From NCBI GenBank assembly GCA_964304625.1, contig OZ199838.1, positions 481,059-545,058 on the forward strand: 64,000 nt of DNA, written 5' to 3'. This document shows, piece after piece, positions 73-33,845 of this stretch (positions are counted from its first letter, which is position 1; each line of letters begins with the position of its first letter). The notes under the pieces were generated by a model. The model did no database searches and was not told the origin of the DNA. It saw only the letters and a program-made list of their open reading frames with translations. The position numbers and the translations under genes are program-made. Origin of the DNA: Kudoa neothunni (taxonomy: Eukaryota; Animalia; Cnidaria).

Positions 73-3000
73 ATGATGATGAGATTATCTTTACGACAAC
101 GAATCACTTCTACAACATACCTGGTCATCTTCACTCGTATTTTTCTTTGAGATTATATATATATTAATCGTTATTAGTGTTTTTTGCAAACAATGTGATC
201 TCTGATAATATTGATAATAATATAATGAAAGTTAATTTTTCACATAATAAAGAGAAATATATTATTTCAATTTCTGGATATGATATTGAGAATAGCTTCA
301 GACATTGTGCCCTCCAATACTATGGACAAACTAAGGAAGCAATTAGCTTCGCCTCTAAATGTGCTACGGACATAAGTGGTGCAAAATTGGATCAGAAATT
401 AAATATGTGTACTTACACATGTAAAAAAATTGAATTAAATCTGAATGGTACAGAGTTTAAAACAATCAAATTTTTAAAATGGTGCCAAGGTATGAATGAG
501 AATGATGTAAAAAAATGCACAACCAAGAGAGTTTTTGCCATAAAAAGTATAGCAACATATATCATATTATTTAATATAGAAAAATAGATCTTTACATAAA
601 GAGTTCGTTGACTGCAACCAAAACGAATGGTACGTTCACTATTTCAGTTCGAAGTAAAGAAAGCCGTGGTTTGATTGTCAAAGACATTCCTGCTTCAAAA
701 GTTAGCCAAGAATCATCACCTGAATTTTATACAGCCAAATCTATTACACTACCTTCTAAATCATATCAACCTACGTATGTGATTGAAGTCGATCAAAAAA
801 CGCCAGCAATTTTATTGAGTCCAAAAAACATTAATGAGGATTGGTTTATTGCTACTGGATCAAAACAAACCCACATTAATAATTATTATACAGTTACGCT
901 CCAAAATCCGAAACCTTCTCAAATTTGTTACTTTGGAATAAAAAATATTAATGACTCTCATTTTTCCTCTAGTTGCTCAGCTATGAATCGAGCTGGACCC
1001 TGTTTTCAACCTTGTTATAAAGCAACTTTGTATCATGATCAAATTTTTGATTTCGCTCAAGTACTTGTAAAACCCCTAGACAAGATCATATCCAAAGAGT
1101 TTATTCAAACTATAACATGTAAATTGTAATTTATCTGTTGTTTTTTATCGATTCTATAGTCTGTTGCAATCAACCCACTGTTACTGTAACTGGAAAGAAT
1201 GGAGCGACCTTAGCGTTAACTAATCTAAATAAAAATAAAGACACCAAACAAGCTGTAGAGGGAGCGTCTATTGTAGAAATCAAAATAATAGAGAAAAATC
1301 TGGGAATTAACGATAATTGGGAAAATCTCCCGTGCAACGGAGAATGTAACAGTTTTCAACCGATAACTTTGAGCTTGCTTGTACCACTAACAGAATACAT
1401 TTTAAAAGTTAAAATAAAAGGACTTGAAACATTAGATTCTATCGAAGTTAATTATTATCACCGTTATTTTTATTTCAAAACTGAAGGTACCGATAAATAT
1501 TTACTCTATATCTATAATTTCTATTAGGGGATAACTTAGCAAATAATGGTCCTTTTACGCCAGGCAACACCCCTGATCAACATAATAAACTAACCCTAAC
1601 CCTATCGAATTCATTTACCGGCGAAAACATTAATAACGAAATATGTGATCTCTATTATTCAGTCGCTGAAAGTGATTCACAAATATATCCTGCTACATGT
1701 GAAGAAGGTAGAGCTAAAAAATTTTGTTCTGGTACTTGTAATAGCCAGTTCTATATAATAAATCTTGATCCTAAAACAAACTACAAAATAACTGTTTGCC
1801 CGAAAGGATATAACTGCATTACAAGCGTTACGGTGCCGAGTAATTTATTTATGGAATATAAGAATAATTAATTTAAATAGCTAGCGGAATCGATATAACA
1901 ATAGCCATATCGGAAGTTGATGGGCAAAAGAAAACTAAAGCTACAGTAACTGCTGCAGGTAAAGAATTGGGAGCTTCATGGGCGTACGTTTTACTGGAAC
2001 AAAAATCTAACAAAATTATCAAGGATTGTTTGAATGGCGGTTGTCAACCTGCTGTAACGAATGAAGCTAACACAATAGATTTATTATGGGATTCTCTCGA
2101 CTCCGAAGTTGCATATCAAATAGTGGTTATAAATGAAGAATACTCTAAACCAACAGATAAGAAAATAGAATGTAATTGCTCTTTTGTATAAATAATAATT
2201 TTATATTTTTAGCTGGTATTGAGGAAGGTGATCAGAAAATGATTCTATATTTCAATAAGCTAGAACAAGGGTACAAAGTTAAGTTCATAGATGATAAACT
2301 AACTAGTAAGAAAAAAAAAACTTACACGGTAAAAAAATCTAGTAATGACCTTTTGAGTTACGGAAATGCTGGAAAAACTAACTTAGTAATTACAAAACAA
2401 TGCAATGAACTTACATCATTTTTCGACATTGATCCTCATAGTCAGAATAAACCAAATTATATTTCCGTCACTTATTTGCACACTAAAGCTGATAATGTAG
2501 ACAATCTTCAAAAATCGGCGATTAAGAAAGAAATTATTGCGAAATCGCAATCAGTTAACGGAATCCTGCTTTCAGGAAGCAGCAATGCGGACGAGCTACT
2601 TATAGGAAATAACGGCGACACAGGGGTGATAACAAATCCAAAAGCATTACGTTCATCATCTGAAATAGAAAAACAGACTAAAACAACGACAAAAGACGTC
2701 CCTTTTAACGTAGGAAAGGTCTATTCATACTACATAGGTAATATTTAACTTTTTTCTGAATTAAATCATTTTTTGAAGATCATTACGAAGAAATTACCCA
2801 CACAGCTAAATTAGAAGACGACAATATAAAATTGGGTATAAATAAATGCTCATTAAAATGCAAATCATTCAAGGATACCAAAGAACAAAATGTTGTGAAG
2901 CAACCACAATCTTGCGGCACTCATGATAAAGTTGAAAGTTATTCGATTCAATTTGATGAATTAGTTAAAGATTATTACATAAGCTGCCCAGAATATTTTG

Positions 3001-6000
3001 ACTTCCATTATTTCTATGACAATACATTTGTTAAAAATCAAGCTCCCTTTTTCAGTAGATTTTATTACGAATTAAAAAATGTTGAACAAAAAGATACATT
3101 TACAGTTCAACTTACAAATCCAGAGCCGTCTGAAATGTGCACATTCGAATGGATAGACGCCACAGCATCAGCTTCAAACAGTTTTTTTTCGAATGAATGT
3201 AATAATATGGAAAATTGTTTTCTCAGTAGGTGCAACAGCTACAAATTTGGAAATGTGCAGCCGAGTGTAAAGGCGGTTAAAATAAGGGTGCTAAAACTAG
3301 GAATGAAACCTACTATCGGCTATCAAAATAATATACACATACGTAAGATTTAGATATATATTTAGTAAATAACACAAAATATTTTAGTGAAACATGGTGA
3401 CGATGTTCCTGCGACAACAGTTGAAAATAATATTCAAATAAACATTAAGGGGAAAGATAAAAACGAGGTTGGCCAGGATGTCAAACCAACTGTTATATGC
3501 TCCCTAAAGTTTTGGAATACATACGCTCCATTAGTTTCCGAAACTGGAAGGAAAGAGGTGAATAATCGATCAACCGATTGTAACTCTGAGGAAGTTAAAA
3601 TTACTCCTGAACCAACTCATTTACATAATGATATTATGGTAACCATAACGGGTATACCTAATTACTCGCCAAGAAAATATTTTTTCCATAAAATAGGTAT
3701 TTGATAAAATTAGACGTTATTTTAAATATTTTTTCTGCTCAAGGAAGCCAACAACTTTCCATTCCAGAGTCTTCAATCAGAACTAATGCAAATGGAATCA
3801 CAATTAACGAAAATTCAGAGGCTCCAGAAAATATTTGTACTATCTACATAAAAGAGGAAAGCGATTTATATTATCCTGCAACTTGCTTGGGAAATGTGTT
3901 GTGTGTAAAATCGTGCAAATTAAAGTTCGAGATCATTAGACTTAACTCCCATACCACGTATGCTCTCAAAATTGTCCCTAGTGGAGCTTACGAAACTCTA
4001 ATTTTTAATAATAAAAAAACCAGTAATAGTCATTATTTATATATTTAATGAGTGAATTAATAATAAATAGTTGGTAACGAAATTGAATTTGTAATTTCAA
4101 ATAATTCCGAGAAGAACAAGCTCATAATACAAACGAAGCAACCTTTGGATAACGCAAGCGATACAAAATGTTACTATCAGTTATATAAACATGAATCAAA
4201 TGAAAGTATTTGTATCATGTTACCTTTATTATCATTAAATAGCTTCACCTACGAGAATAATGAAGTCCTGCATTGATTGTGTTAATGAGGCTGATGTTAT
4301 AAAATGCAACGTTATTCAGTTTGATCATAATACATACAGTAGTAAGTATAACTACAGGATAATGATTTATGCGGACAAAAATTCGTCATCATTCAAACTA
4401 TCGATACCAGGTAACATTTACAGAGAAGTTTACATTGACATACATTTATAGCTTTTATTCGACGTGGAAAACTTGAACAAAAGTTTATAAAATCCTCGGG
4501 TGCAGAAGCTGAGAAATTTTCAGTTACATTGAAAGATTTTTCAGCGACTAAGTGTGTGATAAAAATCGCTGATTTTAGGGAAAATGCATTTAGCAAGCCA
4601 CAACTCTGCACAGGTGATAATGGTGATTGTTTAGTGAACTGCAATGAGAATGAGTTTGAAGTCGGATACATTAATTCAAAAGTTTATCGATATATATCAG
4701 TTTGTTACGGCGCAGACGACGCAGAAGCCAGAAGATGTAAAAAGATGCAAGTGTTCCCAATAATAATGAGTAATTAAAAATAATAATATTTATATAATAT
4801 AGTTTTCAACAATATTTTTTTATAGATTACAAACAAGATAACACTTATGCAATATCTTATGCTGCCGGAAAAGTTAGTTTCTCTTACAAATCAAACTCAA
4901 TAACTGAATGGAATATACAATATGACGGGAAGGATGATCCACAGAGTGACACAGAAAAGACCAAAATAAAAATCGAAGCTAATTCTGAGACTCCACAAGT
5001 TAAATCATCGTCTCTCCCACTTGATAGATACATAAGTTATTATAATGTCAGTTCAACACTGTTATGGCCTGGAATATTATATTATATGAATAATAGTTAC
5101 GTGAAATCTGAGACCCCCCTAAAATCTCAGATCATTTATTCTGTTTCAAGCGTTGTTGATAACAATAGAAACCTTCAGATTAAATTCTCTCCTGGTCCAT
5201 ATAATGACGAGATTTGTCACATCAAAGTATTTAAGGTAAGTGAAACTGACGTAGATCAAGAACCTAAGATTCTGAATGGATGCACTGGAGAGAAAAAAGA
5301 GTGCTTTCAGCTTTGTCAAGATGGTATCATTAGCTTGACGGAAGAAGGTGATAAAGTTGGAATAATTGTAAAACGAAGGTTTGATACCTCTGGATTCAAA
5401 CAATACTTTAAAAGTAGTATTGGATTCAACTTCAAAAATAATATCTTATAGGAAATGACAATGGCATAAATATAAGCAACATTAAGGATACGGAAGTCAC
5501 TCTTACCGGACTTGACGTCTATAAGCGTATGAAGACTGATGGCAATACTTCTGAATGTGCAATTAAAATACGCCTAGCAAATACTTTTTCGACTGAAAAA
5601 AAAGCTGAATGTAAGGAAAATGGTGAATGTAGTGCTGGCTGTGAAGGGTCATACACTATTAATAACCTTCAGGCCGATACAAATTATGTAGTTTCTGTCG
5701 CCATAACTAACATTGGAATTACTGATTATATTAAGAAAACAACATTCCGAACAAGTAATAGCATATTTAAAACATTGAAGTTTAACAATACATTTAGCTG
5801 AGGGAGGAACTGTAGCCGCCAAGGTTTCAAAACAAAACATAAAGAATTCCACTGCTACAATAACACCATTTGAATCTGAAAATCATTTTTCAGTCTGCAG
5901 AATATATGTTAAAAAAAATGGGACCTCAGATCCAAAATATATGGCTACGTGTGACGAAATAGGAGCATGCGAGAACAAATGTGATGTTGAGTTCAGAATA

Positions 6001-6995
6001 GTCAACCTAGAATTAGGAACTACCTACAAAGTGACCGTCGAACCATCTGATGGCAAAAAACAAAAGGAGTATTCCATTGAAACAAGTATTCCAAATCTAT
6101 CAGCTTGTTTAATTATTTTTTATAGTAAATGGTACTATTTCAATTAAGCATTCGTTGTATGGAGAAAGTGACTTGACAATTGATGTGCGTTTCGAAGGAA
6201 AAGATAACAATTCAAAATGTCCATTTATGATTCAGGAAAAAATAGGAGACAATCAGGAAGGGAAAATTGTTACATGGTGCAATGATGATGAAGAATGCTC
6301 TGCCAATAAGTGTATCATTAACATCAATAACTTGTCGAAAGGAAAAGATTACATATTGAAATTAAAAGCAAAGGATTACTCACTCTATAACAAATATATA
6401 ATTCAATGTAAACATATTTTGTTTAAACTATTAAATAATCCTTATTGTTTCATAATATATTTTGCGAAGACTCAAGAATAGGTGAAATGAAAGGGTAATT
6501 AAATTCCAATTATTTACCATATAAATAAAATAATTTATTTAGTGAATTAAATAAAAAATCCTTATGGAATAAAAAATTTATAGGAGGAGAAAATATAAGG
6601 AGTGAGTATGCTAACATTGTAGTAGATAATATTGTTCAGAAAGTAATAGAAAAGGTTGAGAAAGGGTAAAAACAATTGTTCATGTCATATTTATAAAATT
6701 ATATTTAGTAACATTATTTTAATTTAATGATCTGATAAAAAAGAAACATTGTAGATAGTAAAGAAAACCACAATTTCGATGCTGCAAAGAATAGTTATTC
6801 GTAATTTACATTTATATTTTCGAGTTTTACATTAGATAGGTCTGTTGGAAGTTACATGTAATAGAATATACATATTTGTTGTAGATAAGCTTTCTTAGAT
6901 TATATGCAATGATACCCATCGTGGTTTCACTTTTGGTAATGATAGGTATAGCTGTTTACAGAAGGAATTCTGAGGACGTTTCTTACGATCTATAA
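73..6995 (+). CDS. Large type-I membrane protein with tandem Cys-containing FN3-like modules, paralogue 1 (22 exons, ~1,970 aa)
   Basis: Manual exons: 73-136, 178-546, 588-1118, 1160-1486, 1528-1839, 1881-2171, 2213-2737, 2779-3342, 3388-3696, 3744-4022, 4071-4205, 4243-4410, 4452-4769, 4826-5413, 5452-5754, 5798-6085, 6126-6407, 6470-6493, 6584-6664, 6755-6800, 6840-6857, 6899-6995. They join into one frame with GT-AG introns (two of them nested). N-term MMMRLSLRQRITSTTYLVIFTLFFANNVIS is signal-like. Repeats end in FN3-type motifs (INLDPKTNYKITV, NNLQADTNYVVSV, VNLELGTTYKVTV, LLVPLTEYILKV). C-term YILYAMIPIVVSLLVMIGIAVY-RRNSEDVSYDL*. Confidence 0.85.
6494..6583 (+). other. Candidate nested twin intron ([D1,2] type) no. 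1, paralogue 1
   Basis: aaag|G[gtaatt..tttag 6495-6542]tgaatt..tttatag|gagga. Same layout at 10448-10536 (-) and 33342-33432 (+). Confidence 0.6.
6665..6754 (+). other. Candidate nested twin intron ([D1,2] type) no. 2, paralogue 1
   Basis: aaag|G[gtaaaa..tttag 6666-6708]taacat..ttgtag|atagt. Same layout at 10277-10366 (-) and 33514-33604 (+). Confidence 0.5.
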
Positions 6996-7489
6996 AGTCC
7001 ATGATACATTCATCATTCATTACATCAATTACCTATATTATTATAAAATTTAGTAAACAAATTTGTTATTAATTATTTAAAAATTATATTTGAATATTAT
7101 ATTTATAGTTGATAATGATTAGAATTTTTCATATTGAACTTGATTCATTTTTATCTAAACCTATATAAGAGCTTTAAAAACATACATTTTGCGCATCATT
7201 TCTTAATTCTTATTTTTTAATCCTTTTGTGCCTAATGTTCATTAAAAATTTAAATGAACAAGAGAAAAAATTACATTTACACGATTCTCTATTTTAATAT
7301 TTTCTCTGAAATAGGTTTAAAATGTTATGGTAATTATTATCTATTTAAAAACAAATTAACAATTTTTATGGATTATAACACTAGAATATGTATTCAAAAA
7401 ATTGACATGGCGCCGTTTTAAAGAATGTAACTTATTTCCATGCATTATCGTAATTAATTCAAATAAAGGTTTTTGTCAAATATATTATA

Positions 7490-9524: not shown

Positions 9525-10035
9525 TTTAAACTTTTAAAAATAATATTTTAACAAAAAACTCTAATGAAATTAATTACGATAATGTATGGAAATTAGTTAC
9601 ATTTTTTAAAAAGGCGCTATTTAAAATTATTGAAATCGTATTTTAGTGTTTTAATTTACCAACATTATTTCGAATTTGTTTTAAATAGATATAAACTATC
9701 ACATCATTTCAAAAATATTTCGGAAAAAATATTAAAAATAGAGAATCGTGTAAATTTAATTTTTTCTCTTGTTCAATTAAATTCTGAATGAATATTAGGA
9801 ACCAAGGGTTAATAAATAAGAATAAAGAAGTAATGCACCAAAAAATGTTGTTTAAGCGCCTATATAATCTTAGAAAAAAATAAATCTATGTTCGATATGA
9901 AAAAATACTAGTAGTTATCAACTATAATTATATTATTTTAAATATAATTTTTAAACAACTAATAACAAATTTGTTAACTAAATTTTACAATAATATAGGT
10001 AATTGATGTAATGAATGATGAATGTATCATGGACT

Positions 10036-13000
10036 TTATAGATCGTAAGAAACGTCCTCAGAATTCCTTCTGTAAACAGCTATACCTATCATTACCAAAA
10101 GTGAAACCACGATGGGTATCATTGCATATAATCTAAGAAAGCTTATCTACAACAAATATGTATATTCTATTACATGTAACTTCCAACAGACCTATCTAAT
10201 GTAAAACTCGAAAATATAAATGTAAATTACGAATAACTATTCTTTGCAGCATCGAAATTGTGGTTTTCTTTACTATCTACAATGTTTCTTTTTTATCAGA
10301 TCATTAAATTAAAATAATGTTACTAAATATAATTTTATAAATATGACATGAACAATTGTTTTTACCCTTTCTCAACCTTTTCTATTACTTTCTGAACGAT
10401 ATCATCTACTACAATGTTGGCATACTCACTCCTTATATTTTCTCCTCCTATAAATTTTTAATTCGATACATTGTTTTAGTGAATTCACTAAATAAATTAT
10501 TTTATTTATATGGTAAATAATTAGAATTCTATCACCCTTTCATTTTATTAATTCTTGAGTCTTCGCAAAATATATTATGAAACAATAAGGATTATTGAAT
10601 AGTTTAAACAAAATATGTTTACATTGAATAATATATTTTTTATAGAGTGAGTAATCCTTTGCTTTTAATTTCAATATGTAATCTTTTCCTTTCGACAAGT
10701 TATTGATGTTAATGATACACTTATTGGCAGAGCATTCTTCATCATCATTGCACCATGTAACAATTTTCCCTTCCTGATTGTCTCCTATTTTTTCCTGAAT
10801 CATAAATGGACATTTTGAATTGTTATCTTTTCCTTCGAAACGCACATCAATTGTCAAGTCACTTTCTCCATACAACGAATGCTTAATTGAAATAGTACCA
10901 TTTACTATAAAAAATAATTAAACATAAGCTTATTGATTTTGAGTACTGGTTTGAATAGAATACTCCTTTTGTTGTTTTCCATCGGATGGTTCGACGGTCA
11001 CTTTGTAAGTAGCTCCTAATTCTAGGTTGACTATTCTGAACTCAGCATCACATTTGTTCTCGCATGCTCCTATTTCGTCACACGTAGCCATATATTTTGG
11101 ATCTGAGACTCCACTTTTTTTAACATAAATTCTGCAGACCGGCAAAAGATTTTCAGATTCAAATGGTGTTATTGTAGCAGTGGAATTCTTTATGTTTTGT
11201 TTTGAAACCTTGGCGGCTACAGTTCCTCCCTCAGCTAAATGTATTGTTAAACTTTAATGTTTTAAATATGCTATTACTTGTTCGGAATGTTGTTTTCTTA
11301 ATATAATCAGTAATTCCAATGTTAGTTATGGCGACAGAAACTACATAATTTGTATCGGCCTGAAGGTTATTAATAGTGTATGACCCTTCACAGCCAGCAC
11401 TACATTCACCATTTTCCTTACATTCAGCTTTTTTTTCAGTCGAAAAAGTATTTGCTCGGCGTATTTTAATTGCACATTCAGAAGTATTGCCATCAATCTT
11501 CATACGCTTATAGACGTCAAGTCCGATAAGAGTGACTTCCATATCCTTAATGTTGCTTATATTTATGCCATTGTCATTTCCTATAAGATATTATTTTTGA
11601 AGTTGAATCCAATACTACTTTTAAAGTATTGTTTGAATCCAGCGGTATCAAACCTTCGTTTTACAACTATTCCAAATTTATCACCTTCCTCCGTCAAGCT
11701 AATGATATTATCTTGACAAAGCTGAAAGCACTCTTTTTTCTCTCCAGTGCATCCATTCAGAATATTAGGTTCTTGATCTACGTCTGTTTCACTTACCTTA
11801 AATACTTTGATGTGACAAATCTCGTCATTATATGGGCCAGGAGAGAATTTTATTTTGAGTTTTCTATTGTTATTAGCATCGCTTGAAACGGAATAAATGA
11901 TCTGAGATTTAAGAGGAATTTCAGATTTCAAATAGGTATTATTCATGTAATAGAATATTCCAGGCCATAACAGCGTTGAACTGATATTATAATAACTTAT
12001 GTATCTATCAATTGAAAGAGCGGCAGATTTATCTTGTGGAGTCTCAGAATTGGCTCCCATTTTCAAGCTGGTCTTTACTGTGTCACTATATGGATCATCC
12101 TTCCCATCGTATTGTACATTCCAATCAGTTATTGAGTTTGATAAGTAAGAGACATTAACATTGCTGTCAGTATAAGATATTTTATAAGTGTTATCTTGTT
12201 TGAAGTCTATAAATGTTATTTACTCTTTAAGTAAAATATATTTTTTAAATACTCATTATTATCGAGAAAATTTGAACTTTTTTACACTTTTTGGCTTCTT
12301 TTTTGTCTGCGTCATAACAAACTGATATATATCGATCAACTTTTGAATTAATATATCCGATGTTAAGATCACTTCTGGTGCAGTCCACTAAACAATCATC
12401 TATATCTACGTCTTCGCAAAGTTGTGGTTTATTAAATTCAGTCCCAGCGAAATTAACTATTTTTATTACACAGTTATTATTATTAGGAAAATTATAAAGT
12501 TTAATTGAAAATTTGTCAATTCCTTTATCCGAAGATGACATATACTTCATTTCAAGTTTTCCACTTCGAGTAAAAGCTATCAATGTATGTCAATTTTAAC
12601 TTCTGTGTAAATGTTACCTGGTATCGATAGCTTTGTTGGCGATGATTTTTTGTCTGCATAAATCATCAACCTGTAGTTATACTTATTATCGTATATATTG
12701 TCAAATTCAATTTTGTTGCATTTTTTAATATCAGCACCTGTATTACAATCAATGCAAGACTTTATTATTCTCGTGGGTGAAGCTATTTGAAGATAATAAA
12801 AATAATATGACGTTACTACCTTCATCTGTTTCGTGTCTATATAACTGATAGTAGCATTTTGTATTGCTTGCTTCTTTGAATGATTGTTTTATTTGTATTA
12901 TGAGCTTGTTCTTCTTGGACTGATTCGAAACTTCAAATTCAATTTGTTCATCACCTATTGATTAATTACTCATTTATTTATTTATTCATTCATTCATTCA

Positions 13001-16000
13001 TTCAATATATAAGTAATGACCGTTGCTTGTTTTTTTGTTTCCAAAAGTTTTTGAGTCATAATTTCCACTAGGAACAAATTTCAGTTCATAAGTGGTATCG
13101 GAGTTAAGTCCAATAATGATGAATTTTGAGTTGCAGGGTTTTATACACAACTCCTTCTCTGCACAAGTAGCAGGATAATATAATTTATTACTCTCTTTTA
13201 CGTAAATGGTACATATCGTCCCTAGAGCTGCTGAATTTGCGGAAATTGTGAATCCATTTGCATTAGGAGAGATTGAAGACTCTTGAATGGAAACTTGGTT
13301 GCGTTGAGCTGAATATACATTTTAAAAAAATTTAATTTCTATTAAATACTTATTTTATGGAAAAAATATTTTCTTGGTGAGTAATTAGGTATACCCGTTA
13401 TGATTACCATAACATCATAATGTAAATAAGTTGGGACAGGAGTAATTTGAACCTTCCCAAAGCTACAAGCAGGCGATGGATCTGTAACATCTTTCCTCCC
13501 AGTTTCAATAACTAATGGAGCGTATGCGTTCCATAACTTTATCGAGCATCCAACATTTAGACCAGTAAGGTCCTCGCCATCTTCGTTTTTATCTTTCCCA
13601 CTAATGTCGATTAGAATCTTTGTATCTGCTGTTGTCACAGAAACATCATTTCCATGTTTCACTAAAAAATTTTATCTTATTTATTAAATATATCTAAAGC
13701 ATACGTATGTGTATATTATTTTGATAACCGATAGTTGGTTTCATTCCTAGTTTTAAAACCCTTATTTTAACCGCCTTTACATTTGTATGCACATTTACGA
13801 ATTTATAACTGATGCACAAACTAAAAAAACAATTTCCTTTATTATCACATTCATTCGAAAAAAAACTGTTTGAGTTTGATGCTGTGGCATCTATCCATTC
13901 GAATGTGCACATTTCAGATGCTTCTGAATTAACTAGTTTAACTGTGAATGCATTGGTTTGTCCATTATTTTTTAGTTCGTAATAAAATCTGCTAAAAACA
14001 GGTGTGTGATTTGCAACAAACGTATTGTCGTAGAAATAATGAAAGTCAAAATATTCTGGACAGCTTATATAATAATCTTTTACTAGCTCGTCGAATTGAA
14101 TCGAGTAACTTTCAAATTCACCTTGGGAGGTTGAGGACTTTGTTCCCGTCACAGATCCCTGTAATTTGGCATCCTTATATGCTTTGCATAACAATGAGCA
14201 TTTATTCAAACCTAATTTTATTTTGTCGCCTCCTAATTCTGCTTTGTGAGTAAGTTCTTTGAAATGATCTTAAGAAATGATTAAATTAATATAGGAATTA
14301 TATAATACCTATATAGTACGAATAGACTTTTCCTACTTTAATGTCGACTTTTTTCGGGTTTTCTTGAGATTTTAATTGTGTATCTGATAAAGGTGCTCCA
14401 TTATGATCATTTTTTCCCCCTTTGCCGCTGCCTTTTGCCGTCGATGGACTTGCGTTCATTGCAAGCGATTTTGAAATTACTTCTTTGTTAATACCAGATT
14501 TTTCCATAGGTGTTATAGGGATAGTTTTGGTGTCTGGATAAGTGACAGAAATATAATATAATCCATTCTGACTACCAGAATCAATTTCGAACGCTTTTGA
14601 AAGGTCATTACATTGTTTTGGCGTTAATCCCCTAATTCCATCGTTCGTATAACTCATCAGATTATCGCTAGATTTTTTGACTGTGCATATTTTATCGCTC
14701 TTACTAATTAGTTCATCCTCTTTGAATTTTACCTTGTAACTATGTGCAGATTTATCGTAATAAAGCACCATTTTCTGATCACCTTCATCAATACCACCTA
14801 TAAATATTAAGTTAATATTTCTATAAAAGAGTATTTACATTCTATGTTTTTTTCTATTGGTTTAGAATGGTTTACATTTATAACAACTAGTTTATATGTA
14901 ACTTCACAATTGAGAGAATTCCATGAGAAATCTATCGTGTAAGATCCACTCGTTACCGTTACAGCTGGATTACATAAGCTATTCAAACAATCCTTGGTAA
15001 TTTTTTTAGATTCTTGTTCCAGTAAGATGTATGTCCAAGAATTTTCTAATATTTGACCTGAAGCAGCGACAAATTTAAGCGTTGTTGTCTTTCCCTTATC
15101 ATTTTCTGAGGTTTCTATTGTTATTTCATTCCCAGTAGCTATTTAAATTCATTATTATTATAAAAATAAAAACAAATTACTTAATATTTCATTGCTTTTA
15201 ACGCAGTTATATCCTTTTGGGCAAACAGTTATTTTGTAGTTCGTTTTAGGATCAAGGTTTATTATATTAAAATTGCCATTACAAGCATCAGAACAAAATT
15301 TTTTGCCTTCACAGGTAGCAGGATACATCGGTGAATAATTTCCAGTAGATGAATAATAGAGATCACATTTTGCCTGATTAACTCTTTCATCGGAAAATGA
15401 ACTAGATGGACTTAGAGTTAGTGCATTATGTTGACCAGAAAATGTTAGCGTTAGTTCACCAGTTTTTATTATTTCTTCTCCTATATAAACTTAGAAATAT
15501 AGAGTTAATATTTAGCGTTACCTTTAGTTTTGAAATAGAAATAACGATGGTAATAATTAACTTCAGGAGAATCTAATGTTGTAAGTCCTTTTATTTTAAC
15601 TTTTAAAATATATTCTGTTAGTGGCAGTAGAGAGCTCAAACTGATTGTTTTGAATCCATTACACCCTCCATTACATGTTGGATCGTTCCAATTGTCTTTA
15701 ATTCCCAGATTTTTCTCTATTATTTTAACTTCTAAAATATCTACTCCATCTACCACAGCGACATCCCCGATTTCATTTTTATTTGAATTAGTTAAATCTA
15801 CCGTTACACCATCCGTTCCAGTGATAGTAATAGTGGGTTGCCTGCCGACTATAGAATCGATAAGAAACATCTGATAAATTACAATTTACATGTGATTATT
15901 TGAATAAACTCTTTTGATGTTATCTTATCAAGGGGTTTAACGAGTACTTGGGCGAACTTTAAATCTTTCTCATGATATAAGGTCGCTTTGTAGCAAGGCT

Positions 16001-16934
16001 GAAGACAGGGTCCAGCTCTATTCATTCCTGAGCAATTAGAAGAAAAATGGGAGTCATTAATATTTTTAATTCCAAAGTAACAAATTTGTGAAGGTTTCGG
16101 ATTTTGGAGTGTAATTGTATAATAATAATTAATGCCGTTGTCTTTTGACCCAGTTGCAATAAACCAATCCTCATCAAGGTTTTTTGGACTCAATAAAATT
16201 TCTGATGACACATTGTCGACTTCAACCACATACGTAGGTTGATATGATTTAGAAGGTAATGTAATTGATTTTTCTGTATAAAAATCAGTCGATGATGGTT
16301 GACTATGTTGTGAAGCAGAAACTCCTTTGACAGCCAACTCTCTGCTTTCTTTCCTTTGAACAGAAAGAGTGAATGTATTATTTTTTATGGTTGCTGTCTG
16401 CAAACTCTTTATGTAAAGATCTGTTCGATTATATTAAAATATTATCAAATAAATTAATATACCTTTTATAGAAAAAACTTTATTGATGGGGCATTTTTTT
16501 ACAACAGTATCATCCTTACCTTGGCACCATTTTATATATTTAATGGATTTAAACTCTTGACCACTGAGATTTAATTCAACTTTTTTACATTTGTAAATAC
16601 ACATTTTTAAATTTGGATCCAATTTTGTATCACTTATGCCTGTATTACACTTGGAAGAGAAGTCGATTGTTTCCTTAGTTTTTCCATAATATACGAGTGC
16701 ACAATGTTTGAAGCTATTCTCAATATCATATCCAGAAACTGAAATAATATATTTCTCTTTATTATGTGAAAAATTAACTTTCATTATATTATTATCAATA
16801 TTATCAGAGATCACATTTTTTGTACATAACACTAATAACGATTAATATATATGATCTCAAAGAAAATTACGTGTGAAAATGACGAGATATATTGTAGAAG
16901 CATATCGTTGTCTCAAAGACAATCTTATCATCAT
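10036..16934 (-). CDS. FN3/Cys-repeat type-I membrane protein, paralogue 2
   Basis: Colinear exon-by-exon homology with paralogue 1. Starts MMIRLSLRQRYASTIYLVIFTLLCTKNVIS and ends RRNSEDVSYDL*. The exons I translated were open. Confidence 0.85.
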
Positions 16935-26977: not shown

Positions 26978-29900
26978 ATGATGATGAGATTATCTTTACG
27001 GCAACGATACACTTCTACAACATACCTCGTCATTTTCACTTGTATTTTTCTCTGAAATTATATATATATATATATATATATATTAATCGTGATTAGTGTT
27101 ATGTACGAAAAATGTGATCTCTGATAATATTGATAATAATATAATTAAAATTATTTTTTCACAAAGTGAGGGGAGCTATATTGTTTCACTTTCTGGATAC
27201 TATATTGAGAATAGCTTTAAACACTGTGCCCTCCAATATTATGGACAAACTAAGGAAACAATCGATTTCTCCTCCAAGTGTAATACAGGCATAGGTGGTA
27301 CGCAAATAAATGATAATTCAAAGATGTGTATTTACAAATGTCAAAAACTCGAATTAAATCTCACTGGTCAAGAGTTTAAATCCATTAAAAACATAAAGTG
27401 GTGTCAAGGTATGAATGAAAATGATGTAAAAAGCTGTCCTACCAAGATGGTTTTTGCTATGAAAGGTATATAACTTATTTGATAATATTTAATATAATAA
27501 AATAGATCTTTATATAAAGAGTTCGCTAACAGTAACAAAAGAAAATAATACATTCACTCTTTCAGTTCTAAGTAAGGAAAACAGCGAGTTGGTTGTCAAA
27601 GAAGATTCTGTTTCAAAATCCAGTCAACCATCGTCTACTGTTTTTTATACATCCAAGTCTATTACAATACATTCTAAATCACATCAATCTACGTATGTGG
27701 TTGAACTCGACAATTACCTACCAGAAATTTTATTGAATCAAAAAAATCTTGATGAGGATTGGTTTATTGCAACAGGATCAAATGAAAACAATGATAATTA
27801 CTATACAATTATGCTCCAAAATCCAAAACCTTCACGAATTTGTTATTTTGGAATAAAAGATATTAATGACTCTCATTTTTCTTCTAATTGTTCAAAGATG
27901 AAGAAAGCTGGGCCTTGTCTTCAGCCTTGCTACAAAGCGACCTTATATCATGAGAAAGATTTAAAGTTCGCCCAAGTAATCGTTAAACCCCTTGATAAGA
28001 TAACATCAAAAGAGTTTATTCAAACCATCACATGTAAATTCTAATTTATCTGATGTTTCATATCGATTGTATAGTCGCTACCGGTCAACCCACTGTGACT
28101 GTCACTGGAAAGAACGTGGCAACTGTAGTGTTAACTAATTTAAATCAAAATGAAGGAGTCAATAGTGCTGTAGGAGGAGTAGATATCTTAGAAATTAAAA
28201 TAATAGAAAAATTCCTAGGAATTGAAGGTAATTGGAAAAATCCTACATGTAGCGGAGAATGTAAAACATTCGAGTCAATCAGTTTGAGCTCGCTTCTGCC
28301 ACTTACAGAATATATTTTAAAAGTTAAAATAAAAGGACTTACACCGTTAGATTCTCCAGAAGTCAATTATTATCATCGTTATTTTTATTTCAAAACTAAA
28401 GGTAACTTTAAATATTAGCTCTATATCTGTAATTTCAAATAGGGGATGTATTAACAAAAACTGGCGGTCTTAAACCAACCACCACTTCTGACCAACATAA
28501 TAAACTAACTCTTAACTTATCCAATTTATTTTCTGATGCAAACAGTAATGAAAAACAATGTGATCTCTATTATTCAGTCGCTGGACGTGATACATCGATA
28601 TATCCTGCTACTTGTGATGGAAAAAAGTTTTGTTCTGGTCCTTGTAATATCGTGTTTAATGTAATAAACCTTGATCCCAAAACAACATACAAAATAACTC
28701 TTTGTCCTAAAGGATATAATTGTATTGAAAGCACCGAGGAGTCAAGTAATTTATTTATTAAATTTAATAATAATGAGATTAAATAGCTACCGGAACCGAT
28801 ATAACAATAAGCACCTCAGAAGATGATGGAGATAACAAAACCAAGGCCACATTAACTGCTTCTCCAGCTGGAAATTTAGGATCTTCGTGGGCATACATCC
28901 TACTGGAAGAAGGATCCAATAAAGTTATCAAGGATTGTTTGAATAGCGAATGCGATCCTGCTGTAACAAATGGACCTAACACAGTAGATTTCTTATGGGA
29001 TTCTCTCAACTGCGAAATTACATATAAACTAGTTGTTATAAATGTTGAATCTTCCAAACCAACCGAAAAAAGCATCGAATGTAATTTCATTTTTATATAA
29101 ATATTAATTATATATTTATAGGTGGTGTTGAAGAAGGTAATCAGAACATGGTCCTATATTACAATAAATCAGAACCAAAGTACATGATTAAATTCAAAGA
29201 CAATGATCTAACTAGCATGAGTGGTAAACAATGCACCGTCCAAAAATCTAGTGTTAATCTTTTGAGTTACGTTGATGTTCAAATAAACGGAGGAAAAATT
29301 CAAAAAACATGCGACAATCTTTCAACAAAATTCGGCATTGACATTAATAGTCAGAATAAACCAAATTATATTTCTGTCACTTATCTAGACACCAAAACTA
29401 TCCCTGCAAAAAAGGCCGAACTCTCACATATTAGGAAAGAAATTATCTCAAAATCGCATTCAGCCAGCGAAAATTTAAAAGGACCAAAAATAAACGGTGG
29501 AGAAAAAAAAGAAGACATAATTGAACTACAGCCGGAAGTAGTAACTTTCAATGTAGGAAAGGTCTATTCATACTACATAGGTAATATAAAATTTCGTTAG
29601 AAATTTAACCATTTCTTTTAAGATCATTTCAACGAACTTACTCACAAAGCTGAATTAAAAGATGACAAAATAAAGTTGGGTTTAAATAAATGTTCAATAG
29701 AGTGCAATGCATATAAGGACACCGACGTGCAAGGATCTGTGAAGGAACCACAATCTTGTGGCCCCCAAGATGGTATTGGAAGTTATTCGATTCAATTTGA
29801 TGAGTTAATAAAAGATTATTATATAAGCTGTCCAAAATATTTTGACTTTCATTATTTCTACGATAATACATTTGTTAAAAATCAAGCCCCTATTTTCAGT

Positions 29901-32900
29901 AGATTTTATTACAAACTAAAAAATGATAAAAACCCTGATTCATTCACAATTCAATTGGTTAATCCAGAGCCATCTGAAATGTGTACGTTCGAATGGATTG
30001 ACGCCACAGCATCAAATTCAAACAGTTTTTTTTCGAATGAATGTGATAACACGGAAAACTGTTTTTTCAGTATGTGCAACAGCTTCAGATTTGGAAATGT
30101 GCAGCCGAGTGTAAAGGCCATTAAAATAAGGGTCCTAAAACTAGGAATGAAACCTACTATCGGTTATCAAAATAATATACACATACGTATGATTTTGATA
30201 TATTTAATAAATAACACAAAATATTTTAGTGAAACATGGTGACGATGTTTCGGTGACAACCACTGGAACAAAAATTAAAATCGATATTAATGGGAAAAAT
30301 AAAAACGAAGATGGTGAGGAAGTTACCAGCCCAGCTGCTACATGCGCGGTAAGGTTTTGGAACGCGTACGCCCCATTAGTTACTGAAACTGGAATGAAAC
30401 TTGTGACTAATCTATCGTCGGATTGTAACTTTGGGGAGATTCAAATTACTCCTGTCCCAACTTATTTACATTATGATGTTATGGTAATCATAACGGGTAT
30501 ACCTAATTACTCACCAAGAAAATATTTTTTCCATAAAATAAGTATTTAGTCAGATTAAAAATTCTTTTAAATATATTTTCAGCTCAAAACGAACAAATTT
30601 CCATTCAAGATAATTCAATCTCTCCTAATTCAAATGGATTCACAATTACCCCAACTTCAGTAACTCAATCAATAATTTGTACTATCTACATAAAAGAGAA
30701 AAGTGATTTATATTACCCTGCAATTTGTTCATTAAAGGAGTTGTGTGTAAAACCGTGCGACTCAACGTTCGGCATTATTGGGCTTAACTCCGATACTTCT
30801 TATGGTCTCAAAATTGTTCCTAGTGGAGCTTATGACACTCAAATTGTTAATAATAAAAAAACAAGTAACAACCATTATTGATAAGTTTAATAAGTGAATA
30901 AATATTCAATAGGCGGTGAAACAATTGAATTTGAAATTTCAAATCAGTCCAAAAAGAACAAGCTCATTATACAAGTGAAACAATCATTCAATGGAGCAAG
31001 CGATACAAAATGCTACTATCAGCTATATAAACATGATACAAACGAAAGTAATAATGCCATATTTATTTTTACTATCTTTAAATAGCTTCACCCACGAGAA
31101 TAATAAAGTCTTGCATTGATTGTACTAATGACGATGATGTTAAAAAATGCGATGATATCAAGTTTGATAATGATATTTACGATAACAAATATAACTACAG
31201 GTTGATGATTTATGCAGAACAAAAATCGTCACCTTTCAAACTATCGATACCAGGTAACATTTACAAAGAAGCTAAAAACTGACATACATTTGTAGCTTTT
31301 ATTCGGCGTGGAAAACTTGAACAAAAGTTTATAAAATCTTCGGTGGATGATGTTGAAAAATTCTCAATTACACTAAAAGATTTTCCCAATACTAATAAGT
31401 GTGTAATAAAAATGGCGAATTTGGCAGGAACTACATTTAAGAAGCCACAACTCTGCACAGACGTAGATGAAGGTGATTGTTTGGTGGAATGCACCAAAAG
31501 TGATCTTAATGTCGGATATATTAATTCAAAAGTGCTCGATATATAACAGTTTGTTATGGCACAGACAACGCAGAAGCCAAAAGTTGTAAAATGGTTCAAG
31601 TATTCCCAATAATAATGAGTAATTAATAAGAATAATATTTTGATAATATAATTTTCAACGATACTCTTTTTAGATTACAAACAGGATAACACTTATGCAA
31701 TAACTCATACTGACGGCGAAATTAGTTTCTCTTATAAATCAAACTCAAAAACGAGTGGAATATACAATATGACGGGATCGATGATAAACACATCGGTACA
31801 CAAAAGACTTTATTAGCTATATCAACTTATTCCGAGACTACAGATGTTAAAACTGCTTTTCTCTCGATTGATAGATACATAAGTTATTACAATATCAGTT
31901 CAACACTGCTCTGGCCAGGAATATTCTATTACGTGAATAATACTTACTTGAATTCGGAGATCCCTCAAAAATCAGAGATCACTTATTCTTTATCAAGCGT
32001 TGCGAATAACAATAGGCAACTTCGGATAAAATTCTCTCCTGGTCCATATAATGACGAGATTTGTCACATCAAAGTATTTAAGGTAGATGAGAATGGAGCA
32101 GATCAAGAAAGTAATGTTCTGAATGGATGCACTGAGGAGAAAAAGAGTGCTTCCACCTTTGTCAAGATGGTGTTATCAATTTGACAGAAGAAAGTGAGAA
32201 TATTGGAATAATTGTAAAACGAAGATTTGATACCGCTGGATTCAAACAATACTTTAAAAGTAGTATTGGATTTAACTTCAAAAATAATGTCTTATAGGAA
32301 TTGACAGTGGTATAAATATAAGCGATATTAAGTATACGGAAGTCACCCTTACCGGACTTAATGTCTATAAGGATATGAAAGCAGGTTCCTCTGCTTCAGT
32401 GTGTACAATTACAATACGTCGAGCAAATACTTTTTCGACTGAATCAAGGGCTATTTGTGATAATAATAACCAATGTGACACTAGCTGTGAAGAGTCGTAC
32501 ACTATTAAGAGGCCTTCTCGCCGGCACAACTTATGTAATTTCTGTAACAGTAACCAACATTGGAATTATCGGGTACACAAAGGAAACAACATTCCGAACA
32601 AGTAACGGAAAATTAAATGGTCATATGTTAACAATTTATTCAGCTGGAGGAGATGAATTAACGGCGGGTGAATCAGAATCTACCATAAAGAATTCCACTG
32701 CCACAATAACACCATTTGGATCTAATAATTATTTGCCGGTCTGTAGAATTTATATTAAAAAAAGTGGAGTCTTGGATCCAAAATATATGGCTACGTGTGG
32801 TGGAATGGGAGCATGCGAGAATAAATGTGATGCTGAGTTCATAATTGTTAACCTAGAATTAGGAGCAACCTACAAAATAACCGTCGAACCATTCTGATGG

Positions 32901-33845
32901 CAAAAAGCAAAAGGAATATTCTGTTAAGACAAGTATTCCAAATATATTAGTATATGTTTAATAATATTTTTTAGTAAATGGTGCTATTTCAATTAAGCAT
33001 TCGTTGAACGGAGGTAGTGATTTGACAATTGAAGTCGGTTTCACAGGGAAAAATGACAATTCAAGATGTCCGTTTATGATTCAGGAAAAAATCGGAGACA
33101 ACGAGGAGGGGGAAATTATTACATGGTGTAATGATGATGAAAAATGCTCTGCCAATAAATGTACCGTTAACATCAATACTTGTCGAGGGAAAAAGACTAC
33201 ATTTTGAAATTAAAAGCAAAGGATTATTCACTCTATAACAAATATAGTATTCAGTGTAAATATATTTTGTTTAAATAATTAAATAATCCCTATTGTTTAA
33301 TGATATATTTTACAAAGATTCCAGAATTAGTATAATTAAAGGGTAATAAAATTCTAGTTATTTATTACATATTTATAATTATTTAATTTTAGTAAATTAA
33401 ATAAAAAAACATATAGAGTTAAAAATTTATAGAAGGAGAAAACATTAGGAGCGAGCATGTCAACATTGTAATAGATGATATCGTTCAGAATGTAATAAAA
33501 AGGGTTGAGAAAGGGTAAAAACAATTTCTTATGCCATATTTTATAGTATCATATATAGTAAAATATAAATAATTGAATGATCTGAAATATAAGAAAAATT
33601 GTAGATAGTAAAGAAAATCGCAATTACGATGCTGCGAAGAATAGTTATTCGTAATTTGCATTTATATTTTCAAGTTTGACATTAGATAGGTCTGTTGGAA
33701 GTTACATGTAATAGAATATACACATTTGTTATACATAATCTCTTTTAGATTATATGCAATGATACCCATCGTGGCTTCACTTTTGGTAGTGATAGGTATA
33801 GCTGTTTATAGGAAGAATTCTAAAGACATATCTTACGATCTATAA
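26978..33845 (+). CDS. FN3/Cys-repeat type-I membrane protein, paralogue 3 (six single-base frameshifts in the 3' third: assembly error or recent pseudogene)
   Basis: Same exon layout. Starts MMMRLSLRQRYTSTTYLVIFTLLCTKNVIS and ends RKNSKDISYDL*. Indels relative to the paralogues at ~31533, 31752, 32142, 32508, 32893, 33178. Confidence 0.75.

What the first reader, a model, noticed from the sequence alone, without database searches (positions are those of the whole stretch)
73..33845. Three-copy cluster of an unrecognised ~1,970-aa polymorphic surface receptor built from Cys-insert FN3-like modules
Seen: the scattered short ORFs splice into one type-I membrane protein. A ~95-105-aa module recurs with the pattern C-x-I/L-Y/x-I..C-x(3-8)-C-x3-C..I-x-N-L-x-P/x-x-T-x-Y-x-I/V-x-V, e.g. 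ICDLYYSV..YPATC..FCSGTC..IINLDPKTNYKITV; ICTIYIKE..YPATC..LCVKSC..IIRLNSHTTYALKI; VCRIYVKK..YMATC..ACENKC..IVNLELGTTYKVTV. Established: LxPxTxYxVxV is the FN3 E-F strand signature, and canonical FN3 lacks such a 4-Cys insert. Inference: a lineage-specific adhesin, variant antigen or allorecognition-type family, loosely analogous to the clustered cnidarian Alr receptors, which carry a Cys-rich FN3-like domain.
Basis: partly seen in the sequence, partly recalled or inferred. Interest (0 to 1): 0.8.

Follow-up and report, generated by a model that had tools for sequence, protein, structure and literature searches.

The report
Kudoa four-cysteine FN3 surface-protein genes
Three neighbouring genes (two intact, one broken) of the tuna-muscle parasite Kudoa neothunni encode about 1,970-residue membrane-anchored proteins built from roughly twenty disulfide-stapled fibronectin-III-like modules. 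They belong to an undescribed family of at least sixty genes that probably forms part of the parasite's outer surface.

Summary
The short ORFs at 73-33845 assemble into three paralogous 22-exon genes (+, -, +). Introns are 31-62 nt and the module exons all lie in phase 1. Copy 1 (1,977 aa) and copy 2 (1,969 aa) are open from a signal-peptide-like start to a transmembrane helix and an 11-residue tail. Copy 3 carries six 1-nt frameshifts in exons 13-17.

The recurring module is real: four cysteines are invariant in 27 modules. It is a fibronectin type III domain by profile (PDB FN3 domains, E down to 7.5e-8) and by predicted fold (TM 0.63-0.74). The cysteines sit in strand C and the C'-E region.

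The genome matches the published Kudoa neothunni assembly. The window's three copies are part of a ten-copy array. About 60 genes in the genome share this architecture, and over 150 hits suggest a larger superfamily. I found no full-length protein in public databases and no paper describing the family.

Selection is purifying but relaxed (dN/dS 0.48). The 3' ends are homogenised. Nothing supports allorecognition or antigen switching. No RNA evidence could be obtained. The scan had already noted this family at other loci of the same genome.

The parts
73..6995 (+). Copy 1, an intact 22-exon gene of 1,977 codons. Exons: 73-136, 178-546, 588-1118, 1160-1486, 1528-1839, 1881-2171, 2213-2737, 2779-3342, 3388-3696, 3744-4028, 4071-4211, 4243-4410, 4452-4769, 4826-5416, 5452-5754, 5798-6085, 6126-6407, 6470-6493, 6584-6664, 6755-6800, 6840-6857, 6899-6995.
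   Evidence: DP model with all junctions of exons 1-17 in phase 1. Tail exons fixed by a 23-paralogue comparison. No internal stop.
10036..16934 (-). Copy 2, an intact 22-exon gene of 1,969 codons, tail-to-tail with copy 1.
   Evidence: Same exon order and phases as copy 1.
26978..33845 (+). Copy 3. Exons 1-12 are open. The 3' third is broken by six 1-nt indels at about 31533, 31753, 32140, 32511, 32892 and 33178.
   Evidence: Three-way alignment. The DP model needed non-consensus splice sites from about 31300 onwards. Only one of the six indels lies in a homopolymer.
73..200 (+). Signal-peptide-like N-terminus: a basic n-region followed by a roughly 12-residue hydrophobic core that spans the exon 1/2 junction.
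   Evidence: Read from the sequence. Inference only; no predictor was run.
1528..1839 (+). Canonical four-Cys FN3 module (exon 5).
   Evidence: Module HMM i-Evalue 2e-25.
2213..2737 (+). Exon 7, the most variable exon. It contains a Ser/Thr/Gly/Asn-rich stretch of variable length, probably a flexible linker.
   Evidence: 49% aa identity between copies 1 and 2, with 30-66-nt in-frame indels.
2779..3342 (+). Exon 8, the most conserved ectodomain unit (187 aa, 8 Cys in copy 1). It is predicted as two beta-sandwich domains.
   Evidence: Alignment A3 has 56% mean column identity. AF2 gives an all-beta model at pLDDT 67.5. Best Foldseek matches are Ig/FN3 tandems such as NCAM Ig5-FN1. dN/dS is 0.26.
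3744..4028 (+). Canonical four-Cys FN3 module (exon 10).
   Evidence: i-Evalue 2e-23.
4071..4410 (+). Four-Cys module split by a phase-1 intron (exons 11 and 12).
   Evidence: Exon translations. Weak HMM hits on each half.
4452..4769 (+). Canonical four-Cys FN3 module (exon 13).
   Evidence: i-Evalue 2e-24.
5452..6407 (+). Three membrane-proximal canonical modules (exons 15, 16, 17).
   Evidence: i-Evalues 4e-31, 4e-26 and 3e-18. The exon 15 module folds as FN3.
6494..6583 (+). First 90-nt interval that begins GG. It reads as a nested pair: an internal intron at 6495-6542 sits between the G and the T of an outer donor.
   Evidence: The pattern is conserved in the 23 aligned paralogues, and the frame is open in 23 of 23 only under this reading.
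6665..6754 (+). Second interval of the same kind.
6840..6857 (+). 18-nt micro-exon flanked by 39- and 41-nt introns.
   Evidence: The length is invariant and the frame is open in 23 paralogues.
6899..6995 (+). Last exon: the transmembrane helix and an 11-residue tail that ends in a conserved Y-D/E-L carboxy terminus.
4819..7094 (.). Inner arm of the copy 1/copy 2 inverted repeat. Its partner is 9937-12213. Identity is 93-98%, against 75-86% for the outer arms.

Best explanation
The region holds three adjacent members of a large, Kudoa-restricted family of single-pass type-I membrane proteins. Two are intact and one has a broken 3' third.

Each intact gene encodes a signal-peptide-like start and an ectodomain of about 1,900 residues. 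A 21-residue transmembrane helix and an 11-residue tail ending in Y-D/E-L follow. The ectodomain is a string of roughly twenty beta-sandwich modules, almost all encoded by symmetric phase-1 exons. At least seven modules are a fibronectin type III variant. In this variant strands E-F-G are canonical, and strand C plus the C'-E region carry four invariant cysteines, inferred to form two disulfides. A C-x3-C motif sits just before strand E.

Most likely function (inferred, not shown): an extended, glycosylated, disulfide-stabilised rod on the parasite's outer membrane. It would serve as surface coat or adhesin at the interface with host muscle or between parasite stages. The very short tail implies anchoring rather than signalling.

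The family grows and diversifies by tandem and inverted duplication. Gene conversion keeps the membrane-proximal part and the 3' end alike. The membrane-distal and linker exons drift under relaxed purifying selection.
For: Gene models:
- Phase-1 exons with 31-56-nt introns.
- Copy 1 is 1,977 aa and copy 2 is 1,969 aa, both without stops.
- The 3' model is open in 23 of 23 paralogues, with exon lengths 24/81(78)/46/18/97 and indels only in multiples of 3.

Module:
- Four invariant Cys in 27 modules.
- The profile hits PDB FN3 domains: titin 7.5e-8, Dscam 5.6e-6, fibronectin and neogenin. All matches fall on profile positions 53-94.
- AF2 gives pLDDT 78 and pTM 0.68. Foldseek best matches are all FN3 (tenascin, FN3con, monobodies) at TM 0.63-0.72.
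- Atlas FN3 clusters match at TM 0.67-0.74.
- 10 of 27 modules give sub-threshold Pfam fn3 hits.
- C-x3-C occurs in 10 exons of copy 1.
- Exon 8 resembles tandem Ig/FN3 domains.

Functional constraint:
- dN/dS is 0.48 overall and 0.22-0.81 per exon.
- About 58 of 68 exon-8 copies are intact.
- The same exon order and intron positions occur in genomic contigs of at least two other organisms, at 20-66% aa identity.

Homogenisation:
- Exons 15-17 and the 3' end are 94-99% identical between copies 1 and 2, against 68-82% upstream.
- The inverted-repeat arms show the same contrast.

Organism:
- Contig sizes, 40.26 Mb total, GC of about 30% and a single (TAAACC)n chromosome end match PMC12239612.
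Against: - There is no transcript, protein or localisation evidence. The source paper reports that very few RNA reads map to the parasite.
- The signal peptide and TM helix were read by eye, not scored by a predictor.
- Linking the ectodomain to the TM exon needs two unconventional GG..AG intervals. If these are not removed as proposed, the product would end soon after exon 17 and be secreted.
- Introns are about as conserved between the paralogues as exons. Much of the similarity therefore reflects recent duplication or conversion rather than selection.
- The N-terminal exon 2 and exons 6, 7 and 9 have no assigned fold.
- The coat/adhesin role rests only on architecture and analogy.
Confidence: 0.6

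Rival explanations
1. A variant-surface-antigen repertoire. One or a few family members are expressed at a time on the plasmodium or sporoplasm surface. Gene conversion among tandem and inverted copies creates mosaics that evade fish antibodies.
For: - The family is large: about 60 genes with this architecture and more than 150 exon-8-like hits.
- Copies occur in arrays and inverted pairs with conversion tracts.
- Pseudogene copies could act as donors.
- The membrane-distal half is variable and the stalk and 3' end are constant.
- Variant-surface-like families are currently proposed for another myxozoan (bioRxiv 10.64898/2026.02.11.705288).
Against: - No exon has dN/dS above 1.
- The most variable stretch looks like a low-complexity linker, not a binding face.
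- There are no expression data.
- Loci are spread over all three chromosomes rather than sitting in dedicated expression sites.
- Kudoa plasmodia live inside muscle fibres, where antibody pressure is doubtful (general knowledge).
Confidence: 0.15
2. A parasite-internal adhesion, self-recognition or structural family. It would hold together the cells of the plasmodium or sporoblast, or build the spore valves. In the recognition version it would act as an allorecognition-like system.
For: - Long FN3/Ig arrays with short tails are typical of cell-adhesion molecules (PDB matches to NCAM, Dscam and neogenin).
- Myxozoans are cnidarians, and Hydractinia Alr genes are a clustered surface family in a cnidarian (PMC9546547).
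Against: - The tail lacks ITAM and ITIM motifs.
- No V-set-like domain was detected.
- The Alr Fn3-like fold keeps FN3 features in strands A-C and diverges in D-G. This is the opposite of the Kudoa module, which keeps E-G.
- About sixty paralogues is many for a purely structural role.
Confidence: 0.15
3. Mostly decaying repeated DNA. The copies are relics of an amplified segment, and the long open frames are not expressed genes.
For: - The source paper classes 45.6% of the genome as repeats and predicts only 5,316 proteins with a median of 348 aa.
- Copy 3 and several other copies carry stops or frameshifts.
- Introns are as similar as exons between the copies.
Against: - Open frames of about 5.9 kb span 22 exons in two copies.
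- dN/dS is 0.48, with the lowest values (0.22-0.32) in exons 3, 8 and 17.
- Splice sites, exon lengths and the tail frame are conserved in 23 of 23 paralogues down to 66% identity.
- The same architecture is kept in other species.
Confidence: 0.05
4. A divergent orthologue of a known metazoan FN3 receptor, for example the ectodomain of a receptor tyrosine phosphatase, or usherin.
For: The top hits of the module profile among 1.84 billion proteins include receptor phosphatases with many FN3 repeats (P0002).
Against: - Those hits align only to strands E-G (profile positions about 56-94) and lack the four Cys.
- The gene has no phosphatase or other cytoplasmic domain; the tail is 11 residues.
- Pfam finds nothing else in any exon.
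Confidence: 0.03

Closest known systems
Canonical fibronectin type III domain (Pfam PF00041), as in tenascin, fibronectin, titin, Dscam and neogenin
   Same: Seven-strand sandwich in the predicted model (TM 0.63-0.74). The sequence signature of strands E-F-G is the same, including the Y-x-[IV]-x-x-L...T-x-Y-x-[IV]-x-V core and a terminal F-R-T. Modules are encoded by phase-1 exons.
   Different: The N-terminal half is too divergent for Pfam's threshold; the best score is 21 bits against a cut-off of 25. The conserved Trp of strand B is not evident. Strand C starts with an invariant Cys, and the C' region is replaced by a loop with three more invariant Cys, including C-x3-C.
Multi-FN3 type-I receptors (receptor tyrosine phosphatases of the PTPRJ/DEP-1 type, NCAM/Dscam-type adhesion molecules)
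   Same: A long rod of beta-sandwich modules, a single TM helix, and an extracellular adhesion or recognition role. These are the best database hits.
   Different: There is no catalytic or signalling cytoplasmic domain. No orthology was found. Here it is a family of about 60 recent paralogues, not one or a few conserved genes.
Hydractinia Alr allorecognition family (PMC9546547)
   Same: A cnidarian, clustered, rapidly diversifying family of type-I surface proteins with pseudogenes. Alr proteins contain an Fn3-like fold that Pfam does not recognise.
   Different: Alr proteins have a V-set domain, I-set domains and one membrane-proximal Fn3-like fold, and many have tails with ITAM or ITIM motifs. 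The Kudoa proteins have about 20 modules and an 11-residue tail without such motifs. Their FN3 similarity lies in the opposite half of the domain. No sequence comparison with Alr proteins could be run, because no reference sequence was at hand.
Expanded surface-protein families of parasites (Giardia VSPs; the VSP-like and RIFIN/STEVOR-like genes reported for the myxozoan Sphaerospora molnari, bioRxiv 10.64898/2026.02.11.705288)
   Same: Large lineage-specific families of cysteine-containing type-I membrane proteins with very short conserved tails, organised in arrays.
   Different: The fold is unrelated: FN3 arrays rather than CXXC-rich VSP repeats. Cys content is much lower, at 63 in 1,977 residues. 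No switching or exclusive expression has been shown.
N-terminal FN3 domain of class I cytokine-receptor homology modules (from general knowledge)
   Same: An FN3-type domain with four conserved cysteines forming two disulfides. gp130 and G-CSF receptor appear among the fold matches of exon 8.
   Different: In cytokine receptors the cysteines lie in strands A/B and C'/E (general knowledge). Here they lie in strand C and the C'-E loop. No WSxWS motif occurs in any exon.

Membership tests
Fibronectin type III domain superfamily | Sequence profile similarity to FN3 domains | tested here: met
   The module profile hits PDB FN3 domains at E 7.5e-8 to 1e-4. 10 of 27 modules give Pfam fn3 hits at E<=0.01, but all fall below the 25-bit gathering score.
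Fibronectin type III domain superfamily | Seven-strand beta-sandwich of FN3/C2 topology | tested here: met
   AF2 model at pLDDT 78. All top Foldseek PDB matches are FN3 at TM 0.63-0.72. Atlas FN3 clusters match at TM 0.67-0.74. This is a prediction, not a solved structure.
Fibronectin type III domain superfamily | Conserved core residues of the N-terminal half (Pro in strand A, Trp in strand B, Tyr in strand C) | tested here: inconclusive
   PDB and Pfam alignments cover only profile positions of about 42-94. No conserved Trp column appears in alignment A2.
Type-I single-pass membrane protein | N-terminal signal peptide | tested here: inconclusive
   A basic n-region and a hydrophobic core of about 12 residues are present in all three copies. 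No signal-peptide predictor was available.
Type-I single-pass membrane protein | One C-terminal hydrophobic helix followed by a basic cytoplasmic stretch, in frame with the ectodomain | tested here: met
   A hydrophobic stretch of about 21 residues is followed by R/K-R/K. It is in frame in 23 of 23 paralogues under the nested-intron model. The joining itself is unverified by RNA.
Hydractinia Alr family | N-terminal V-set Ig domain followed by I-set domains and one Fn3-like fold | tested here: not met
   The architecture has about 20 modules, at least 7 of them FN3-type. No Ig-family hit was found in Pfam for any exon. The definition of the Alr architecture comes from PMC9546547.
Hydractinia Alr family | Cytoplasmic tail with ITAM or ITIM in many members | tested here: not met
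   The 11-residue tail matches neither motif. The tail is conserved in 23 paralogues.
Hydractinia Alr family | High allelic polymorphism and homophilic trans binding | not testable with these tools
   This needs population data and binding assays.
Variant surface antigen system | Large family of surface-exposed paralogues | tested here: met
   There are about 58 intact exon-8 copies and 59 exon-5-type copies. Surface exposure is inferred only.
Variant surface antigen system | Mutually exclusive or switching expression | not testable with these tools
   No RNA data could be reached.
Variant surface antigen system | Diversifying selection on exposed parts | tested here: not met
   Pairwise dN/dS is 0.22-0.81 per exon and none exceeds 1. 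A site-wise test on many paralogues was not done.
Class I cytokine-receptor homology module | WSxWS motif in the second FN3 domain | tested here: not met
   A regular-expression scan of all copy 1 exon translations found none.
[D1,2] spliceosomal twin intron (stwintron) | An internal GT..AG intron lies between nt 1 and nt 2 of an outer donor, so that its removal creates a new GT donor | tested here: met
   The sequence pattern N|G|GTRxxx..YAG|T[AG][AT]xxx..AG is present at both sites in the aligned paralogues. Each half is 40-50 nt, the usual intron size here. The definition comes from PMC12403724.
[D1,2] spliceosomal twin intron (stwintron) | Two consecutive splicing reactions with a detectable intermediate | not testable with these tools
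   This needs RT-PCR or RNA-seq of the splicing intermediate.

The most novel reading that the evidence does not exclude
The family is the myxozoan counterpart of a variant-surface-antigen repertoire. It would comprise dozens to hundreds of FN3-rod coat genes, of which few are expressed at a time, reshuffled by gene conversion between tandem and inverted neighbours. Its conserved 3' end would be processed through two nested [D1,2] twin introns. Those would be the first such introns shown in an animal and could act as a shared control point for the whole family.
Probability: 0.12. Interest if true: 0.85.

Novelty: new variant of a known kind. Interest (0 to 1): 0.55.

Why it matters
Myxozoans are economically important fish parasites, and their surface molecules are almost unknown. 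Here a family of about 60 genes of roughly 7 kb each occupies about 1% of a 40-Mb genome for which only 5,316 mostly short proteins were predicted. More than 150 exon-8-like hits suggest a larger superfamily.

The family is absent from public protein collections except for five exon-sized fragments. It is not mentioned in the genome paper or in any other paper I could search.

If these proteins coat the parasite, they are the obvious candidates for host interaction, diagnostics and vaccine antigens. They would also mean the published gene count is an underestimate. The four-cysteine FN3 variant is a compact, disulfide-stapled scaffold that would be worth a structure. The 3' end offers a testable case of nested introns outside fungi.

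Tried and rejected
- The joined spliced protein was never sent to any search or folding tool. Exons were searched one by one by reference. Joining was done only inside scripts, to count length and stops and to print the roughly 110 C-terminal residues.
- Rfam and tRNA scans of the window found nothing.
- Pfam on ten exons gave only sub-threshold fn3 hits.
- Nematode hypothesis: I considered a Strongyloididae genome because of the three chromosomes and size of about 40 Mb. I rejected it because there is no SL1 leader gene within 3 mismatches and because the Kudoa assembly matches.
- Word-indexed protein search with exon 8 gave only two fragments.
- Atlas feature searches of exons 2 and 14 gave nothing usable.
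- hhalign of the exon-8 profile against the module profile aligns the four Cys, but only at E 0.0036 and probability 9%. This is suggestive, not proof.
- Canonical-only 3' models:
  - Reading exon 19 from 6543 is open in copy 1 only.
  - A 215-nt intron plus a weak AAAAAAG acceptor works in copies 1 and 2. That acceptor is absent in several paralogues.
  - I dropped both in favour of the nested model, which is open in 23 of 23 paralogues.
- Disulfide pairing: two-Cys modules (exons 4 and 6) retain different cysteine pairs, so the pairing could not be deduced.
Full report
WHAT IS THERE

The window is AT-rich (GC 0.23-0.36). Between 73 and 33845 it carries three runs of 90-190-codon ORFs that are visibly paralogous, arranged +, -, +. 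A dynamic-programming search for the longest stop-free GT..AG path from the first ATG gave the same plan for copies 1 and 2. That plan has seventeen exons with every junction in phase 1, and introns of 31-56 nt that are mostly 41 nt. Nearly every exon is one 94-122-residue unit or one 174-196-residue double unit. Symmetric phase-1 exons are the classical packaging of extracellular domains in animals.

GENE MODELS AND THE 3' END

Downstream of exon 17 a hydrophobic helix followed by a basic stretch is plainly readable at 6899-6995. To connect it I aligned the 3' 600 nt of the three copies with twenty further paralogues from the same genome, covering 66-97% identity.

- The alignment shows five small exons of invariant length (24, 81 or 78, 46, 18 and 97 nt).
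- Indels inside these exons occur only in multiples of three, and substitutions favour third codon positions.
- With these exons the tail is open from exon 18 to the stop in 23 of 23 paralogues.
- Copy 1 becomes 1,977 codons and copy 2 becomes 1,969, with no internal stop.

There is a catch. Two of the intervening stretches (6494-6583 and 6665-6754) are 90 nt and begin GG.
- Both have the conserved layout N|G|GTRxxx...(40-50 nt)...YAG|T[AG][AT]xxx...(40-47 nt)...AG|.
- This means an ordinary-sized intron sits between the G and the T of a second ordinary-sized intron's donor.
- That is the [D1,2] 'stwintron' arrangement described in fungi (PMC12403724, PMC9024468).
- Canonical one-step alternatives work only in copy 1, or only in copies 1 and 2.
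- The type-I reading is therefore well supported comparatively, but it is not shown by RNA.
- The joined protein was not submitted to any search or fold. Exons were searched singly by reference.

COPY 3

Exons 1-12 of copy 3 are open. Relative to copies 1 and 2 it has six single-base indels in exons 13-17, at about 31533, 31753, 32140, 32511, 32892 and 33178. Only one lies in a homopolymer. In this assembly it is a gene with a broken 3' third.

THE MODULE

- Eleven window modules and sixteen from elsewhere in the genome align with four invariant Cys. The consensus is C-T-I-x-I...C-x5-C-x3-C-x2-S-Y-x-I-x2-L-x2-G-T-x-Y-x2-S-V...F-R-T.
- An HMM of this alignment finds six exons per gene at E 3e-18 to 4e-31. 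It gives weaker matches in exon 4 and in the C-terminal halves of exons 3, 8 and 14. Exons 11 and 12 together make a seventh module.
- C-x3-C occurs in ten exons of copy 1.
- Against PDB sequences the profile hits only FN3 proteins: titin 7.5e-8, Dscam 5.6e-6, fibronectin and neogenin. All matches use profile positions 53-94, which correspond to strands E-G.
- AlphaFold2 of the exon-15 module gives pLDDT 78 and pTM 0.68. Foldseek returns only FN3 domains at TM 0.63-0.72. The Atlas search agrees at TM 0.67-0.74.
- In the model the first Cys opens strand C and the other three lie where strand C' normally is.
- Exon 8 is the most conserved unit (56% column identity; dN/dS 0.26). It folds, at modest confidence, into two beta-sandwiches resembling Ig/FN3 tandems.
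- Exons 2, 6, 7 and 9 remain unassigned.

ORGANISM

- The genome has contigs of 17.15, 12.04 and 11.05 Mb plus 18.2 kb, totalling 40.26 Mb.
- The published K. neothunni assembly spans 40.2 Mb with N50 12.0 Mb. It has three chromosomes plus a circular mitogenome, GC 30.41%, a median intron of 49 bp and a (TAAACC)n telomere at one chromosome end (PMC12239612).
- A (TAAACC)n array occurs at exactly one place, the last 535 bases of contig 2.

The identification is sound.

FAMILY SIZE AND RANGE

- Exon 8 has about 58 intact full-length matches at 48-89% identity on all three chromosomes and about ten degenerate ones.
- An exon-5-type query finds 59 sites.
- Eighteen genes share the 3' 600 nt at 82% identity or more. 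Ten of them lie in C1:338-515 kb, which includes the window.
- A profile search of 1.84 billion representative proteins returned generic multi-FN3 proteins matching strands E-G only. Just three exon-sized fragments cover the whole module.
- The word-indexed search found two more fragments.
- These fragments come from four short genomic contigs: two Logan runs and one ENA metagenome. The contigs carry the same exon order and roughly 40-nt intron gaps, at 20-66% identity to the window exons. The two fragments searched against the whole genome reach at most 32% and 62% identity. They therefore come from other species.
- No paper I could search describes the family.

DYNAMICS

- Copies 1 and 2 form a 17-kb tail-to-tail inverted pair. 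The inner 2.3 kb of each arm is 93-98% identical and the rest is 75-86%.
- dS falls from 0.2-0.8 to 0-0.14 in exons 15-17, which indicates recent conversion.
- dN/dS is 0.48 overall and never above 1.
- Exon 7 is the most variable. It has 30-66-nt in-frame indels in a Ser/Thr/Gly/Asn-rich stretch that looks like a linker.

FUNCTION

Shown: a conserved, constrained, very large family encoding long FN3-type arrays with a membrane anchor and a minimal tail.

Inferred: a surface coat or adhesin of the parasite. I put about 0.6 on this overall reading. The structural part is near certain and the functional part is much less so.

Rival readings are a true antigenic-variation system (0.15), parasite-internal adhesion, recognition or spore structure (0.15), decaying repeats (0.05), and a divergent known receptor (0.03).

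The Alr analogy fails the tests that could be run. The tail has no ITAM or ITIM, no V-set domain is present, and the FN3 similarity lies in the opposite half of the domain.

STANDING

This is a new variant of a known kind of protein, and the scan had already met the family at other loci of this genome.

Noticed in passing
window 6494-6583 and 6665-6754 (also copy 2 at 10448-10536 and 10277-10366, copy 3, and loci L040-L059): Two 90-nt intervals begin GG. Each reads as an intron nested between nt 1 and nt 2 of another intron's donor, and each half is 40-50 nt. The T after the internal AG is invariant in 23 paralogues. Only this reading keeps the tail frame open in all 23. If RNA confirms it, these would be stwintron-type introns in an animal.
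   Followed up: partly
window 6840-6857: An 18-nt micro-exon sits between 39- and 41-nt introns. Its length is invariant and its frame is open in 23 paralogues. The surrounding sequence is among the most conserved of the whole 3' region.
   Followed up: partly
window 6960-6995 and loci L040-L059: The cytoplasmic tail is only 11 residues and ends in a conserved Y-D/E-L carboxy terminus, preceded by Ser, Thr or Ala in most copies. This holds even in paralogues of 66-70% nucleotide identity. It may be a sorting or PDZ-type signal.
   Followed up: no
window 7480-7960: A relatively GC-rich element of about 470 bp lies in the spacer between copies 1 and 2. It is a dispersed repeat with at least 262 candidate copies at 78-89% identity on all three chromosomes. 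It is SINE- or MITE-like and has no Pfam or Rfam match.
   Followed up: partly
window 20612-22062 (-): Fragments of a hAT transposase lie between copies 2 and 3. The C-terminal dimerisation domain matches at E 1.7e-5. The reading frame is split into several ORFs.
   Followed up: partly
window 52068-53041 (-): Fragments of a piggyBac-type transposase (DDE_Tnp_1_7, E 8e-29 and 5e-6), split into several ORFs.
   Followed up: partly
window 58554-59943 (+): A MUTYH-like adenine DNA glycosylase with HhH-GPD and NUDIX_4 domains. It appears to have a single short intron or frame change near 58909-58979.
   Followed up: no
G000:C1:470974-475182, about 6-10 kb before the window start: A further family copy lies immediately upstream of the window. 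Its exon 8 carries stop codons, while its 3' 600 nt are 95% identical to copy 1. It is another degenerate member kept similar at the 3' end.
   Followed up: no
G000:C2:12039536-12040069: The (TAAACC)n telomeric array occurs at one chromosome end only, as the assembly paper states.
   Followed up: yes
loci L017, L018, L060, L061: Short public contigs (Logan SRR33849685 and SRR33529766; ENA ERZ28624939) carry the same exon order and roughly 40-nt introns at 20-66% aa identity. They presumably come from other Kudoa-like parasites hidden in host or metagenome data. The source organisms were not identified.
   Followed up: partly
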